A stretch of 64,000 bases of DNA from Laetmonice hystrix (Eukaryota), in assembly GCA_965235115.1 (NCBI GenBank), contig OZ249437.1:27466001-27530000 (forward strand), given 5' to 3'. Below the pieces are notes generated by a model. That model saw only the letters and a list, made by a program, of their open reading frames with translations. It did not search any database and was not told the DNA's origin. Of this stretch, positions 18,243 to 52,763 are shown one piece after another. Each line of letters opens with the position of its first letter. Within the stretch, counting starts at the first letter, position 1. Position numbers and translations under genes: made by a program.

Positions 18243-18516
18243 GGATGGGCGGTTACAGGAGAGTGACCAGATCCTAGCGATCGACCGGCAGGTGTTGGAC
18301 ACCAACATCTCACACCAGCAGGCCATCAGCATCCTCCAGAAGGCGTCAGGCCGGGTGGAGTTGGTGGTCGCCCGCGGACCCATCCCGTGCGCACCATCCA
18401 CCGCCCCTGCAGTCGCTACCACCGCCGGCTCGGCCGACGACCTCAGCGCCGACCCTGGCGATCAACCGTATCGGGCACCATCCACGCTCAGCGAGTCGCA
18501 GAACTCCGACATGGTG
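18243..18516 (+). CDS. MPDZ: MPDZ/Patj exon: C-terminal half of PDZ1 plus linker, (R)[45 protein letters not shown]...SQNSDMV
   Basis: Acceptor ttgtgtttacag at 18242 and donor GTG|gtcagt at 18517. DGRL..DQILAI and [11 protein letters not shown] match MPDZ PDZ1. Codons are GC3-rich. Confidence 0.95.
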
Positions 18517-28976: not shown

Positions 28977-29505
28977 ACAATGGTTGTTCGGGACGGTCAA
29001 TGATAGCGGTACGATGAATGGCCCCCAATGGTCAGTGTGAGGAGAGGCTGGACGTCACATCTTTCACCCACAGGTCGTCAGAGATGATCTACACCACTAG
29101 GACTGTGGGCCGGGAGATCCCCGCCACTACTGGAGCATCTACATGTATTTGTCGATGCCCATGTGTAACCTTCACGGCTAGCTATTCAACCTTTGAAAGT
29201 GGGGAATATTTATTAGCGGCCGTCTTAGCGCAATCTCTTTATATTCTGCCAATTAAACAGAAAGAATATGTTTAGCTGTAACTAATTCATGCAGTGAATT
29301 AGGAAAGATTGATAATGTCATTGTACGAAGTGATTACCATTGTCAGCAGCAGGCCTCGTGCCTCTGACAAGTGGTGGGTGTATGGAAAGTTAGGGCTCTG
29401 TTGTGGCTGTGCTAGGTCAGACATGGGTCATCAAGGGTTGCAGTGTGGCTGTAATAAAGTAGGAAAGGATAGAATGGCGGCAGTGAAAGGAGTTTGTTAG
29501 TGTCC

Positions 29506-36510: not shown

Positions 36511-37857
36511 CTGCCCCAAATGCGCAGCCCCACCCTACCTTCTAGTCTCCGTGCTTCGGTATTGACTTGAAAACGGCAAGGAGATCGAAAATTCAAATTT
36601 TTGTCAGACCCTGCTGAATAGCGATTGTTTGTATCGACAGCAGGAAAGAGCAAGAGCGAACTATGGATATAAGATAACCAACGGGATGTTACAGCAACTT
36701 CAAGTGTTGTGGCAAATGTGGATAGGTTATTGACAACGTCTGCAGAGCATTGTCTTTGAAAAAACACGCCGCGATCATTGCTTTTGTGTGTTTCTGTGTG
36801 GAGAGCGAGACCTTTCATTGAGAGGTACCTTAATGGGCCGTTCGGGTGCCGCGACCGAGTGGAGAATTTTCACCTTGGTCTGACGTTAACCCAGCCGGAT
36901 GGAGACATATCGGAGAGTGGGCGGAAGTCGGGTTGGGGAGCTCATTACGAGAGGACATAGAGAGTGGGTCGGACTCTCACACAGCTGGAGACACTCTACC
37001 TCCGTGTGTCGGGGGGGAGGGGTTCTGTTATAATGGCATTGGTGTTCTACAGGAAGTGGCGGGGTTCTGAGGTAAAGTAGGCACTGCTTAGGGAGTTCTT
37101 CTGTAGATGGCGCAACCTTTCCTATTGCTGTTTTCCCCACCAATGGCACCGCCTATAGTGGGTTCTACAGAAGAGATAGAGTTCTTACAGTATTCACGAC
37201 CCCTGCCCATAGAGTTAATGGACCATGTGCCCTGGAGGTTCTCCAGTAGACGAAGTGTTGCGTGTAAAGGTTTGACAGTTGAGGTGTCCCTGTTGGATGA
37301 TGGTGACGGAGAGCCAGAGGAGTTCTAGCATACGGCCTGTACTGTCGCACCACCAGCCGCCGCGGGCTGCACAAGTACTGTTAACATCGACCCTCTCCTT
37401 TCGATCACATGTCTCCTACTTCTGGGTACGTTTTGCTGGAGCTATTACCGATGCTGACAGTGGGACCTGTTTTTTTTATGCGATGTGGAAGCCACAAGGA
37501 GGGAACACACTCTGAAACGTTTCGTTTTGTGACGTCGTCAGCAGTATGCTGACGGAATGGAGTGGCACGTATCTGTGAATGTTGTGTGGATGCTCAGCCT
37601 CGCTGTGACTGTGCACGCGGTGAGATGTTGTGGCTCCACGTACACTTCGACTGGGTGAATACCTGCGGATTAATATCGTACAGAACAGTTTGCAGCATGG
37701 ATAGGTCGGTGTCTGTTTCCTGACCATGTGTGGGCAGATCTCTCAGCACCTATTAAACTGAAAGAGGATACCTGGAAATTTACAATGATGTGAGCCATAG
37801 ACATTGAGTCGTATAGATGTGGGACTTGGACTCTTCCCATTGAAGAGTATTTGGGCG

Positions 37858-38022
37858 ATGTCGCTGGCTGGCAAGGACGTCGACTTGTACTGTAGTGCCA
37901 TGCTGATGGCCATGTACTACGTGCAGTCCCGGCAGAGTAACCCTCCTCGCAGGGTCCCACGGGGAAGGGGTAAAACACACCCTCTTAACGACCCCCGCAA
38001 CATAAGGCGCATCTCTAACAAG
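37858..38022 (+). CDS. Candidate alternative first (or cassette) coding exon of the MPDZ/Patj gene, MSLAGKDVDLYCSAMLMAMYYVQSRQSNPPRRVPRGRGKTHPLNDPRNIRRISNK
   Basis: ATG at 37858 with G at -3. 55 open codons, 40 of them ending in G/C. Donor AAG|gtaggt is in phase 0, matching the phase-0 exon at 49808. Confidence 0.5.
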
Positions 38023-41008
38023 GTAGGTAAAGACAGGGTGACAGTGACACCCCTAGAGCAGTAGGTCTGGCTCACAGGACTCGATCTTTACAAGATGCTA
38101 TGGAATTGCTTTATTCGGCAAGATTCCTCTGATAAATAGATAAATTGTAATGAAATTGGAAATTTCTAGATTCTTCTCATAAGAATTGATCCTTTGCAGA
38201 CAGACGTTAACGGTTAAGTAAATATTAACGGAACGTATTATAATATTAGCAACACCAAAACATTAGGTAGAATTTTAATTAAAGAGTGAATAGATACCAG
38301 AGCTAGTTGCTGAAAGTTCTCTTCGCATTCCGGATATCATATTTTAGGAGAAGCCATTCTTTTCGACTGGATTCATGGAGTTTTATTTGTACGGAAGAGA
38401 ACGATCAACAAATGCCCCGCTGAGGCATCAATCATCTGTTTTCTAGTAGACCCTGCCCGAGTGGCCTCAAAAAGTCGATAAAAATGTTTTTTAAATAAAG
38501 TATTTTACCAGTGGTTTCGACTGTGGAGGTGGCCTGGGACCCAGGGCGGGTCGGCTGGGGCTGATAATTTCCGGAAATCGTCTGATTGATTTAATGAGAA
38601 CGAGGCTGACGAGGATTGATGGGAAGCTGGTAGATGTGAGCCGCATATGGACGGTATTGTTATCTCAGCTCCTCGCCTCTCTTAAAATACACTCAGACTC
38701 AGACATCATTAATGTTCCTCGGACAATGTAAACAGTTATGTTCTACTTCTTAGAATTTGTTCAACATTAGAAGTTGAGAAGTGCGAATTACAGATAGATT
38801 TAATTTAAGTGAGCTGTACTCCGTTCATCATGTGAATTCTCTGAGGGGACGGTGAAGGCAATACTTTGATATAATTCCGAAACTTCTTCAGACATGAGCC
38901 GTTGAAATTATACATGAGACAGTGGCAGTCTGAATGAGACATTGCCAGTCTAAAGTGGCCAGTTATGAGGGACTCATCTCATGCGCAGTTCTGTTTGAAT
39001 AGTCTAGCTCTGTTATTGGTTTTGAATACTTCAGAATTTTCCAGAATCTTTGTCAATCTAGGTTTTAGATTTATTATTACAGTTTGGTATGCCGACATTT
39101 AATATTTTCATTATGCTGACTTTAGCGTTTCCCAGGAGCCTAAAGTTACGATCGCACGGCTGGCCCGTCGTAACCCTGCAGCCATATAAACGGTCTCTTT
39201 TTGTACAGGCAATTTCGTCACATATCACGTGGAATGAAATTGTCTTCCGCTAACTGAGTTATCAAGCTTCCCTCCATCAGGCGTGTGAAAGAAACGGCTG
39301 TCGGTAAAATGGGATGGAGTGAACACATTGGGCTAATCCCGTAATATCATTTGCCGCTGCGCAAATTTGAAACTGGGTGGACGCTTAAAACTCGTCAAAG
39401 TAGAAAACGTTGTGTTATTATTGGTAGCAGTTTGGCCCAGCAAAGAGACGTGCACGGTAAGCGATGGGTTGGTCACATTATGTTGACTTGTGTTAGTGAT
39501 GACGGTTCCCTGGATGCTGGAATTGTTATCAGTGATAGGAATGCTGCTGCTAATGTCACGGCAGAACCAGTGAGCCATCAACCGTACTGCAACTAGAAGA
39601 AAACTAAAAGACTTTAAAAAAGAGTGAAAGGCTCAAACTTTTCTAGCTTTGGATAGGAATTATTAAGACCACACGAGCGAGTCAGACTTTTACGATAAAT
39701 CAATAAAATTGAATTGATGAAATTGCTAGCACATTGCTAACAAAGACGGTGTCCGTTTTGTCGTAATTTTGTATAGTATATACAGACTTGAATCTGATGA
39801 ATTGTAAGGTTTGCTCCTCGTGTAGGTCTTACTGGTAGCTCCTGGATCTTTGTACGATTTACACAAAGCTGTCGCCAACGATAGATGGCTTGAAATTTTT
39901 CTTTCGTTTTTCAATGCGGTCTTCGACAGCAGATTGGGAGTGCTGCCGACAACATCGCCGCCTTCTTTATAATGGAATCGTTGTGCTGTATGAGCAGTTA
40001 GAAGGATGATATTGAACACACGCCGGGTCCCTAATGCACAGGGAAGTACTCGCCACCTCAATCAAGAGGAATTCACGGAGAACAAGACTGGACTTGGCCG
40101 CCTTTCGCTACATGATCTGATAACGAGATATGTCGTCATGAAAATCACATCGGACAGTTGCCTGGCGGGGTGGGACCAGATCTAAGACACGCCTTAACGA
40201 GTGCCCAGGACGGTATGGCGTAGCCCTTGTGTGCCAACCGCAGCACCAAGCCATATTTGGTGTAGAATTTCTCCTGTGTCACATCAGCGACACTTAGTTT
40301 GTCTAGGCTGCTGTTTGAGCTCGTACAGACTCTGTGTGGCAAATCTCGGCTATTGAGGGTCGGAGGGAGGGAGGGGGGACAAAGGGCATGAGGTTCTGGT
40401 CCTGTGGGTAGGGCGCAGAGATAAAGGCCCACTGGCTGAGATAAAGGCTTGGCAGTGAGCCTGGAATGGGCCGTTGATGAGGTGATTGCCTCCATACGGT
40501 AATGTGACAGCGGGCTGCTCTGCGTGGGAAATGAGAAAATGGCGCGGAGCGTTGGACTGTTGAAATAAATTAAGTGGTACGTCAATGTGTAATGATCTGA
40601 GCTCAGGACATGTCAGGAATGTAGTTTTTTCCACCCTGTTGCAAGGTTAGCAGCTGCTCCACCGGTTTTGACCTTTAACTGTGTTTTTTGATCAGTGTAA
40701 TCTTCCCGAAAAGGTCGTGACGATAGGTGTTTTTGCCCATTTTAATTAAATTGTAATTAGAAAATCTCACCATGTAAGTTTTATGGAAGTCTGAGGCAAT
40801 ACTTTCCGACTTGGCCGTTCATGCCCGCACCCCGTCAGATTATGCTCATATTTTTTCATTATGCTGTCATTATTTTAGCATTTGAATATATCTCTGTCTA
40901 CATTGTCATTTCTACAATGGAGAAAGTGTGTCTATCACTGCTGCTGTGAAGAGACGATAATATTCTTTGTGACGACTGACAGTAAGTGTGAGAAGTTGTG
41001 TGAAACAT

Positions 41009-49807: not shown

Positions 49808-49942
49808 CTAAGTACAGAATGGACACAATTAGAAGTAATCGACCTGATCAACGACGGCTCTGGGCTTGGCTTTGGCATCATTGGTGGCAAGAGCACCGGT
49901 GTAGTCGTCAAGACCATCCTGCCGGGGGGTATCGCCGACCAC
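49808..49942 (+). CDS. MPDZ: MPDZ/Patj exon: N-terminal half of PDZ2, [45 protein letters not shown]
   Basis: Acceptor gtgttgcag at 49807 and donor CAC|gtaagt at 49943. Contains the GLGF loop. 135 nt, phase 0-0. Confidence 0.97.
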
Positions 49943-52382: not shown

Positions 52383-52763
52383 GACGGTCGACTTCGGAGT
52401 GGGGACCACATATTTCAGATAGGTGACGTTAACGTGCGGGGCATGGGGTCGGAAATGGTGGCCTCAGTGTTACGGCAGTCGGGCAGCCACGTTCGCCTGA
52501 TCGTCGCTAGGGGCGTGCAGGAGCCGTTCCCGACAGCCCTGCCACACGCTCCTATCGTACCAACTCACGCACTCGACGAGAACCTACGTCACCTGTATGC
52601 AGCCCTGCTGGCGGCCGACAACCAGGCAGCCGAGAACTACGACTTGATGGCGGCGTCGGCAGCAGGTGGCGGGGGAGGTCATCTAGACGGCATCGAGGTC
52701 ATGGACATCCACGACATCAACTCCCGAGAATACGACCCCTACTATAACGCACAGATTCATAAG
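52383..52763 (+). CDS. MPDZ: MPDZ/Patj exon: C-terminal half of PDZ2 plus linker, DGRLRSGDHIFQIGDVNVRGMGSEMVASVLRQSGSHVRLIVARG...YNAQIHK
   Basis: Acceptor ttattttcag at 52382. The PDZ2 motifs are clear. The 3' end is less certain: weak donor AAG|gtgtcc at 52764, with an alternative phase-0 GAG|gtcatg at 52698. An in-frame stop at 52773 requires a donor before it. Confidence 0.9.

What the first reader, a model, noticed from the sequence alone, without database searches (positions are those of the whole stretch)
37846..38022. Hidden coding exon in the 31-kb intron: candidate N-terminus of an MPDZ/Patj isoform lacking L27 and PDZ1
Seen: 55 open codons from ATG 37858 (MSLAGKDVDLYCSAMLMAMYYVQSRQSNPPRRVPRGRGKTHPLNDPRNIRRISNK), 40/55 ending in G/C like the real exons. 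It ends exactly on a codon boundary at a good donor (AAG|gtaggt), the phase needed to join [13 protein letters not shown] at 49808. A possible phase-0 acceptor (ctcttcccattgaag|37846) would allow cassette use instead. Known: the L27 domain links Patj/MUPP1 to Pals1/Stardust in the Crumbs complex. Inference: an internal-promoter isoform would swap L27-PDZ1 for a short Arg-rich peptide (RRVPRGRGK...RNIRR), possibly a membrane-binding or nuclear-targeting element, uncoupling the scaffold from the Crumbs complex.
Basis: partly seen in the sequence, partly recalled or inferred. Interest (0 to 1): 0.75.

Follow-up and report, generated by a model that had tools for sequence, protein, structure and literature searches.

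The report
Conserved hidden start exon in Patj/MPDZ intron
A 55-codon stretch inside a 31-kb intron of this marine invertebrate's Patj/MPDZ scaffold gene is a real protein-coding exon, kept under selection at the same place in a distant relative. It most likely starts a shorter protein that lacks the part tying Patj to the Crumbs polarity complex, but no RNA data were obtained to show the splice.

Summary
ATG 37858 opens 55 codons (40/55 ending in G/C) that end on a codon boundary at AAG|gtaggt (38022/38023). The stretch is single copy in the genome.

Sequence alone would not prove an exon, because this window has dozens of open frames of 70 codons or more. The decisive result is comparative. 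An unnamed relative (ENA ERZ25767047) carries a 61-codon homologue (78% amino-acid identity) in the orthologous intron, between the same PDZ1-end and PDZ2-start exons and on the same strand.
- It is the only alignable block in the 31-kb and 43-kb introns.
- Differences by codon position are 14/7/30 (p = 3e-4), and all gaps are whole codons.
- dN is 0.17 with saturated dS, which lies between the values for the gene's accepted exons.
- The ATG, an in-frame stop upstream of it, and the phase-0 donor are kept in both species.
- Conservation stops exactly at the donor.

In the relative there is no phase-0 acceptor between the upstream stop and the ATG. This favours the "own start codon" reading over the cassette reading.

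The join to 49808, the promoter and any function remain inferred. Only DNA runs were found, and no protein in the databases carries the peptide fused to PDZ domains.

Verdict: a real coding exon (about 0.9) and an L27/PDZ1-less Patj isoform (about 0.65).

The parts
37858..38022 (+). Coding part of the hidden exon: ATG plus 54 codons. It comprises a predicted hydrophobic helix (about residues 4-26, core LYCSAMLMAMYYVQ), an Arg/Gly-rich linker (RRVPRGRGK) and a fully conserved tail HPLNDPRNIRRISNK.
   Evidence: sequence; 78% aa identity to P0001, codon-position differences 14/7/30, dN 0.17 with saturated dS; AlphaFold2 from a 2-sequence alignment: helices 4-26 and 46-53, mean pLDDT 69.5, modest confidence; net charge +8.
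38023..38028 (+). Phase-0 splice donor, AAG|gtaggt. The relative has AAG|gtaagg at the same codon.
   Evidence: Protein conservation is 15/15 up to the K and collapses right after GTA(A/G)G. The read-through tails differ (VGKDRVTVTPLEQ* against VRR*).
37798..37800 (+). In-frame stop (TAG) 19 codons upstream of the ATG. The relative has an in-frame TGA 6 codons upstream of its ATG.
   Evidence: in-frame translation of both upstream regions.
37831..37845 (+). It could bring in an untranslated leader exon or, in this species only, allow cassette use. It is not conserved as a phase-0 acceptor in the relative.
18244..18516 (+). Accepted Patj/MPDZ exon: C-terminal half of PDZ1 plus linker. It ends ...SDMV|gtcagt in phase 0.
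   Evidence: Pfam PDZ 7e-5; orthologous exon in the relative, 57% aa identity.
49808..49942 (+). Accepted Patj/MPDZ exon: N-terminal half of PDZ2 ([27 protein letters not shown]...). It has a phase-0 acceptor and is the inferred splice partner of the hidden exon.
   Evidence: 96% aa identity to the relative; exon border shared by many animals.
52383..52763 (+). Accepted Patj/MPDZ exon: C-terminal half of PDZ2 plus linker.

Best explanation
Window 37858-38022 is a real protein-coding exon with its own start codon, lying in the 31.3-kb intron between the PDZ1 and PDZ2 exons of the genome's Patj/MPDZ orthologue. Transcripts that begin inside this intron, or that bring a short untranslated leader to an acceptor just before the ATG, would be translated from ATG 37858. 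They would then be spliced from the phase-0 donor at 38022 to the next phase-0 acceptor, most likely the PDZ2 exon at 49808. The product would replace L27 and PDZ1 with a 55-residue head made of a hydrophobic helix, an Arg/Gly-rich linker and a conserved basic tail containing RRIS, followed by PDZ2 and the remaining PDZ domains. Without L27 it could not form the L27 tetramer with Pals1/Stardust, so it would act as a Crumbs-independent form of the scaffold. Shown: the sequence features, single-copy status, purifying selection on the + frame, orthologous position, and conservation of the ATG, the upstream stop and the donor. Inferred: transcription, the splice partner, the promoter and any function of the peptide.
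For: (1) The only real relative among 5.8 billion and 1.84 billion proteins is P0001, an ORF on a 3-Mb ENA contig. (2) Walking that contig and tblastn place it 20.4 kb after the PDZ1-end exon and 22.7 kb before the PDZ2-start exon, on the same strand and in the same order as in the window (19.3 and 11.8 kb). (3) It is the only block that blastn or tblastn aligns between the two introns. (4) Coding signature: 21 synonymous against 12 non-synonymous codon differences; differences by codon position 14/7/30 (chi-square p = 2.8e-4); gaps only in whole codons; dN 0.175-0.21 with dS about 2.2 or saturated. The gene's accepted exons give dN 0.02 (PDZ2a), 0.05 (PDZ2b) and 0.33 (PDZ1 end plus linker). 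(5) Both species have the ATG within two codons of each other, an in-frame stop upstream, and a strong donor (AAG|GTAGGT, AAG|GTAAGG) at exactly the point where conservation ends. All neighbouring exon borders are phase 0 in both species. (6) It is single copy in the 627-Mb genome, so not a transposon fragment. (7) No variant was listed in 37479-38054 in the contigs of three DNA runs, while flanking contigs show about 2% differences and indels (weak, one sample). (8) A possible third, much more divergent copy exists in ENA ERZ25069853: ATG, 36 codons, CAG|GTTAGT in phase 0, 7.2 kb upstream of PDZ2a on the same strand, sharing M.SL....D....A....MYY.Q.R. The shuffle test gave p 0.003-0.04.
Against: There is no RNA evidence at all. 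The run search returned only DNA contigs of one sample. That search used a 3-kb query in which the exon is only about 6% of the words, so the blank is uninformative. Among 120 PDZ2a-containing proteins of 57-182 aa, the few spliced ones show only the canonical ...DMV|L(S/N)TEW junction and none shows ISNK|LSTEW. No database protein carries the peptide fused to PDZ domains, although isoforms hidden inside 50% clusters would be missed. No CpG or sequence signal of a promoter was found upstream. Upstream ATGs at -41 (window) and -63 (relative) require a short leader. Two other relatives showed no copy within 10 and 17.7 kb upstream of PDZ2a, but those introns were not covered fully. Conservation rests on one clear relative.
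Confidence: 0.65

Rival explanations
1. The exon belongs to an independent product nested in the Patj intron. This could be an unspliced small protein (68 aa here, 64 aa in the relative, reading through the GT to the next stop), or the first exon of a separate gene whose later exons are too short or too divergent to detect.
For: The frame stays open past the donor to a nearby stop in both species. No RNA shows splicing. No fused peptide-PDZ protein is on record.
Against: Conservation is perfect for 15 residues up to the K and ends exactly at a strong GT donor in both species. The read-through tails are unrelated in sequence and length. No other block is conserved anywhere in either intron that could serve as a further exon. 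The next conserved phase-0 acceptor on this strand is the PDZ2 exon.
Confidence: 0.2
2. It is a cassette exon inserted between the PDZ1 and PDZ2 exons of the full-length protein, using the acceptor at 37846. This would add 59 residues to the PDZ1-PDZ2 linker.
For: In the window the acceptor ctcttcccattgaag|AGT is in phase 0 and the frame is open from 37801.
Against: In the relative an in-frame TGA lies 6 codons before the ATG, and none of the codon boundaries between it and the ATG follows an AG. Protein conservation starts at the ATG, not at the acceptor.
Confidence: 0.05
3. It is not coding: either a chance open frame or a conserved non-coding element, such as an intronic enhancer or an exon read on the other strand.
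For: Open frames of this length are common in this window, and two antisense frames overlap it.
Against: Substitutions concentrate at + frame third positions and are rarest at second positions (14/7/30, p = 2.8e-4). Gaps fall only in whole codons, and the frame, ATG and donor are all kept while synonymous sites are saturated. Neither open antisense frame has its wobble position on + position 3 (worked out from the coordinates), and antisense matches to the relative are short and weak.
Confidence: 0.04

Closest known systems
PATJ / MPDZ (MUPP1) / Drosophila Patj, canonical form
   Same: It is the host gene. An L27_2 exon lies upstream. There are multiple PDZ exons, and a PDZ2 sequence and exon border are shared with many animals, one hit being named 'multiple PDZ domain protein' by its source.
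   Different: The canonical protein starts with L27, which pairs with PALS1 L27N in a tetramer (background in PMC9006659). The inferred isoform starts after PDZ1 with an unrelated 55-residue peptide that has no Pfam match and no named relative.
Alpha/beta N-terminal isoforms of DLG-family MAGUKs (PSD-95, SAP97, PSD-93); from my own knowledge of the literature, not tested here
   Same: Alternative first exons give either an L27 domain or a short Cys-containing peptide in front of the same PDZ array. This switches how the scaffold is anchored. Here a short peptide with a Cys conserved in two species (LYC) would replace L27.
   Different: It is a different gene family with no sequence similarity. 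PDZ1 is dropped as well. Lipidation of the Cys is untested, and the possible third homologue has Leu at that position.
C. elegans MPZ-1, the candidate PATJ orthologue without a recognisable L27 domain and with about ten isoforms (PMC9006659)
   Same: It shows that PATJ/MUPP1-type scaffolds exist and work without an L27 domain, and that they have many N-terminal isoforms.
   Different: In the worm the whole gene lacks L27. Here L27 is present, and the L27-less form would be an extra product. The start peptide has no match there.

Membership tests
Protein-coding exon under purifying selection | Open frame kept in diverged species, with substitutions biased to third codon positions and dN much lower than dS | tested here: met
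   differences 14/7/30 by codon position (p = 2.8e-4), 21 synonymous against 12 non-synonymous codons, dN 0.175-0.21, dS about 2.2 or saturated. Accepted exons of the same gene give dN 0.02-0.33.
Protein-coding exon under purifying selection | Insertions and deletions only in multiples of three | tested here: met
   gaps of whole codons only (12 nt in the DNA alignment; three 2-residue gaps in the protein alignment).
Protein-coding exon under purifying selection | Orthologous (syntenic) position in the relative | tested here: met
   it lies between the PDZ1-end and PDZ2-start exons, on the same strand, and is the only conserved block in the intron.
Alternative first coding exon of Patj/MPDZ | Own ATG with an in-frame stop upstream, conserved across species | tested here: met
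   TAG 19 codons upstream in the window and TGA 6 codons upstream in the relative. The ATGs are within two codons of each other.
Alternative first coding exon of Patj/MPDZ | Conserved splice donor whose phase fits the downstream exon | tested here: met
   AAG|gtaggt and AAG|gtaagg, both phase 0. The PDZ2a acceptor is phase 0 in both species.
Alternative first coding exon of Patj/MPDZ | Transcripts joining the exon to PDZ2 exons (junction reads or cDNA) | tested here: inconclusive
   One search found no RNA run (the query was too long for a 165-nt exon). laid DNA contigs only. Searches show no ISNK|LSTEW junction among database fragments of 57-182 aa.
Alternative first coding exon of Patj/MPDZ | Transcription start site or promoter upstream of the exon | tested here: inconclusive
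   no conserved upstream sequence and no CpG o/e peak. CAGE or 5'RACE is needed.
PATJ/MPDZ host gene | N-terminal L27_2 domain followed by a series of PDZ domains on one strand | tested here: met
   the one L27_2 match reported in the genome (45 bits, over the cut-off) lies at C2:27415667-27415831 (+), about 50 kb upstream of the window. PDZ matches in exons at 18.2, 49.8 and 52.4 kb.
DLG alpha-type lipid-anchored N-terminus (analogy only) | N-terminal Cys that is palmitoylated and needed for membrane or synaptic targeting | not testable with these tools
   Cys12 is conserved in two species but is Leu in the possible third homologue. No lipidation data exist.

The most novel reading that the evidence does not exclude
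Lophotrochozoan-type Patj/MPDZ genes carry an old internal start exon. It produces an L27- and PDZ1-less scaffold whose hydrophobic-helix plus Arg/Gly-rich head gives a second, Crumbs/Pals1-independent way of anchoring or regulating the PDZ array, analogous to the alpha/beta switch of DLG MAGUKs. The divergent 36-codon exon in ENA ERZ25069853 would then be the same module, and the helix M.SL....D....A....MYY.Q.R would be its ancient core.
Probability: 0.3. Interest if true: 0.6.

Novelty: new variant of a known kind. Interest (0 to 1): 0.45.

Why it matters
Patj/MPDZ is usually treated as a Crumbs-complex component because of its L27 domain. A conserved internal start that removes L27 and PDZ1 would mean that part of the protein pool in these animals is built to work outside that complex. 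It would also give a clean handle, a 55-residue isoform-specific peptide, for separating the two roles with isoform-specific knock-outs, tags or antibodies. On the practical side, it is an exon that gene predictors are likely to miss, and it shows that one syntenic relative can validate such short exons when RNA data are lacking.

Tried and rejected
- RNA evidence. The look-up of sequencing runs with a 3-kb query returned only three DNA-type runs of one sample. With hindsight, the exon alone should have been the query. Read laying on those contigs shows DNA coverage only.
- Pfam found nothing on the 87-aa frame, and the ESM Atlas had no usable hit.
- Representative search. Besides P0001 it gave only two repeat-inflated artefacts: P0002, a 2,696-aa tandem-repeat ORF, and P0003, a triplicated ERM/FERM-like fragment. 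I rejected both as relatives.
- JGI metagenome contigs. The protein-pattern scan and a degenerate DNA pattern for NDPRNIRRISNK|GT found nothing.
- More relatives through their PDZ2a ORFs. ERZ25069859 has no copy within 17.7 kb upstream. The next walking step landed on a repeat on another contig. ERZ25084518 has none within 10 kb. No DNA was served for ERZ25072384. These introns were not covered fully, so absence is not shown.
- Profile search with three sequences. It returned only P0001 and P0124, which is the ERZ25069853 ORF itself from another haplotype contig.
- Promoter signals. There is no CpG o/e peak and no conserved upstream block.
- Spliced-leader idea for the 28 loose letters at 37830. 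I rejected it because the 28-mer belongs to a satellite of about 560 copies, is not followed by GT, and has no Rfam match.
- Transposon origin. I rejected it because the stretch is single copy at both DNA and protein level.

Full report
**Observation.** ATG at 37858 is followed by 54 further sense codons giving the quoted peptide. The last codon, AAG, ends at 38022 and is followed by gtaggt. Forty of the 55 codons end in G or C (codon list). The stop-free frame spans 37801-38061. The polypyrimidine-AG at 37831-37845 exists and is in frame. The neighbouring exon borders are also as stated, and both are phase 0...GAC ATG GTG|gtcagt at 18516 and ttgcag|CTA AGT ACA GAA TGG at 49808.

From this genome alone the frame is not convincing. 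The window contains dozens of stop-free frames of 70 codons or more on each strand, many produced by minisatellites. Two antisense frames over the same place are open as well. ATG-started frames of 50 codons or more that end on AG|GTR are rarer: four places on the + strand, two of them at accepted exons of the gene, and one on the - strand.

**Host gene.** Pfam finds PDZ halves in the exons at 18.2, 49.8 and 52.4 kb. The one L27_2 match reported in the 627-Mb genome lies on the same strand about 50 kb upstream of the window. The PDZ2 exon is nearly identical to exons from many animals, one of which its source names 'multiple PDZ domain protein'.

**Single copy.** The 1-kb region and the peptide each occur once in the genome. 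The exon is therefore not a repeat or a transposon fragment.

**A relative with the same exon.** The word-indexed search of 5.8 billion proteins found one hit: P0001, a 64-aa ORF called on a 3.04-Mb contig of ENA assembly ERZ25767047. The exhaustive search of 1.84 billion cluster representatives found the same protein as the only credible relative. The other two hits are tandem-repeat artefacts.

I walked along that contig through neighbouring called ORFs and merged 57 kb of it. tblastn of all window frames against it finds three things in order on one strand:
- the PDZ1-end exon (57% identity, ending ...SSDMV|gtgagt);
- the hidden exon, 20.4 kb downstream of that;
- the PDZ2-start exon, 22.7 kb further on (96% identity, ttttgcag|CTG AAT ACG GAA TGG), followed by the next PDZ2 exon (92%).

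In the window the corresponding distances are 19.3 and 11.8 kb. This is the orthologous intron, 43.3 kb long in the relative. Sensitive blastn between the two introns aligns nothing except the hidden exon.

**Coding signature.**
- The DNA alignment shows similarity starting at the ATG and ending a few bases past the donor. The flanks are as different as random sequence.
- In the 55 aligned codons, 21 differ synonymously and 12 non-synonymously.
- Differences by codon position are 14, 7 and 30 (chi-square p = 2.8e-4). All gaps are whole codons.
- dN is 0.175 (NG86) to 0.21 (LWL85), and dS is about 2.2 or too saturated to estimate.
- With the same method the accepted exons give dN 0.02 (PDZ2a), 0.05 (PDZ2b) and 0.33 (PDZ1 end plus linker), with dS 0.7-1.7.

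The hidden exon therefore evolves like a moderately constrained coding exon of this gene. The periodicity fits only the + frame. By their coordinates, the two open antisense frames put their third positions on + positions 1 and 2.

**First coding exon or cassette?** Both species have an in-frame stop upstream of the ATG: TAG 19 codons upstream in the window and TGA 6 codons upstream in the relative. In the relative, none of the codon boundaries between that stop and the ATG is preceded by AG. A phase-0 cassette joining PDZ1 to this frame is therefore impossible there. This favours translation from the exon's own ATG.

The nearest upstream ATGs are at -41 (window) and -63 (relative). The leader within this exon should therefore be short. 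Alternatively, an untranslated leader exon may be spliced to an AG just before the ATG, and both species have such AGs. These data cannot distinguish the two options.

**The donor and the partner.** The last 15 residues (HPLNDPRNIRRISNK) are identical in the two species. Directly after them come AAG|GTAGGT and AAG|GTAAGG, and then similarity ends. The read-through tails are VGKDRVTVTPLEQ* and VRR*. The simplest reading is a conserved splice donor.

Nothing else is conserved in either intron. The next conserved phase-0 acceptor on the strand is the PDZ2 exon, so the join 38022->49808 is the most economical inference. It remains an inference.

**What was not obtained.** The run search returned three DNA-type runs of a single sample and no RNA run. 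I made that search with a 3-kb stretch in which the exon is only about 6% of the sampled words, close to the tool's holder threshold. The blank therefore says little. Another agent's note suggests RNA runs of this organism exist.

Laying the DNA contigs added only a weak hint. No variant is listed in 37479-38054 in any of the three runs, whereas the flanking contigs carry about 2% differences and several indels.

Among the 120 best PDZ2a-containing proteins of 57-182 aa, most are genomic ORFs. The few spliced ones show the canonical ...DMV|L(S/N)TEW junction, and none shows ISNK|LSTEW. Longer proteins could not be reached because of the length filter. Scans of JGI metagenome contigs were blank.

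**How old is it?** Two other relatives showed no copy within 10 kb (ERZ25084518) or 17.7 kb (ERZ25069859) upstream of their PDZ2 exon. Their introns were not covered fully.

A third assembly, ERZ25069853, has three haplotype contigs (L014-L016). On the same strand, 7.2 kb upstream of PDZ2a, it carries an ATG followed by 35 codons and CAG|gttagt in phase 0, encoding MESLDMSNTDAFLGAIVAGMYYMQVRKQAQQLQQWQ. This aligns with the start of the window peptide (M.SL....D....A....MYY.Q.R) and lacks the basic tail. Shuffling the query gives an equal or better score somewhere in the 10 kb upstream in 11 of 300 (window peptide) and 1 of 300 (P0001) trials. Taken with its position, strand, ATG and donor phase, I regard it as a possible distant homologue, not an established one.

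**The peptide.** It has no Pfam family, no named relative and no Atlas hit. AlphaFold2 on the two-sequence alignment predicts a helix over residues 4-26 (pLDDT about 87 for residues 11-20), a disordered Arg/Gly-rich middle and a short helix at 46-53, with mean pLDDT 69.5.

The first helix is strongly hydrophobic (LYCSAMLMAMYYV), and the rest carries ten Arg/Lys, for a net charge of +8. The relative expands the middle into RRRRGGRGRGRG. RRIS fits the R-R-x-S pattern of basophilic kinases (my own knowledge). A hydrophobic helix followed by a basic cluster is compatible with membrane or partner docking. A nuclear signal or RNA contact through the RG repeats is equally open. None of this was tested.

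**Comparison with known systems.** Canonical PATJ and MUPP1 start with L27, which forms a tetramer with PALS1 L27N. C. elegans MPZ-1 shows that this scaffold type can lack L27 and has many isoforms (PMC9006659). The nearest functional analogy, from my own knowledge, is the alpha/beta N-terminal switch of DLG-family MAGUKs, where alternative first exons give either an L27 domain or a short Cys-containing peptide.

Two literature searches found no report of a PATJ/MPDZ isoform that starts between PDZ1 and PDZ2 with a dedicated peptide. The library is incomplete, and the official annotation of this genome could not be consulted.

**Verdict.** The exon is real and coding (about 0.9). The reading as the start of an L27/PDZ1-less Patj/MPDZ isoform is the best explanation (about 0.65) but lacks transcript evidence. 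The cassette alternative is unlikely, and the functional proposals are open. It is a new variant of a known kind: an alternative N-terminus of a polarity scaffold. Interest is moderate.

Noticed in passing
window 37830 (run X2); G000 C2 28.72-28.75 Mb, C3 21.14-21.23 Mb, C5 14.54-14.59 and 16.24-16.28 Mb, C6 30.10 Mb, C1: One contig of DNA run X2 carries 28 foreign letters directly before 37830, which is 28 nt upstream of the ATG. That 28-mer belongs to a tandem repeat (period about 1.67 kb in the C3 array, variable elsewhere) with about 560 copies in the genome. It has no Rfam match and no GT after it, so it is not a spliced leader. It is either a chimeric contig or a polymorphic insertion.
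   Followed up: partly
window 6.2-7.4 kb, 12.7-13.4 kb, 15.4-16.2 kb, 21.1-21.6 kb, 23.1-24.3 kb, 27.6-29.1 kb, 29.5-30.5 kb, 36.1-36.9 kb, 60.1-60.8 kb: Many minisatellites give long stop-free frames in several frames and on both strands (up to 465 codons at 27.6-29.0 kb). They inflate ORF lists and are not genes.
   Followed up: no
window 37107-37283 (+): A second ATG-started frame (59 codons) ends on AG|GT, 750 bp upstream of the hidden exon. It has no counterpart in the relative's intron, so it is probably chance.
   Followed up: partly
window 38031-38044; relative (ERZ25767047), merged coordinates about 29140-29151: A short motif G(G/C)TGACAG(T)G(A)CAC is shared 8-15 nt downstream of the donor in both species. 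It could be an intronic splicing element or chance.
   Followed up: no
P0003: The peptide's helix DVDLYCSAMLMAMYYVQ weakly resembles the ERM FERM-domain motif DVYCPPEAAVLLASYAVQAK. The E-value (4e-4) is inflated by three tandem copies in P0003, and I judged it chance.
   Followed up: partly
P0004-P0123: The acceptor before L(S/N)TEW.Q.EVI (start of PDZ2) and the donor after ...PGG(V/I)AD. are at the same codons in more than 100 genomic ORFs from many assemblies, so this exon border is widely conserved. P0098 (a 987-nt Logan contig) has intron-derived residues before the exon but is spliced after it, which suggests a retained intron or a start just upstream of PDZ2.
   Followed up: no
L012 670-5782 (-), ENA ERZ25069859 ctg22029: An LTR-retrotransposon-like block (protease, RT, RNase H, integrase, plus a Baculo_F envelope-like ORF) lies next to a 70-aa ORF that is repeated on more than 100 contig blocks of the collection. 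This stopped the contig walk in that species.
   Followed up: no
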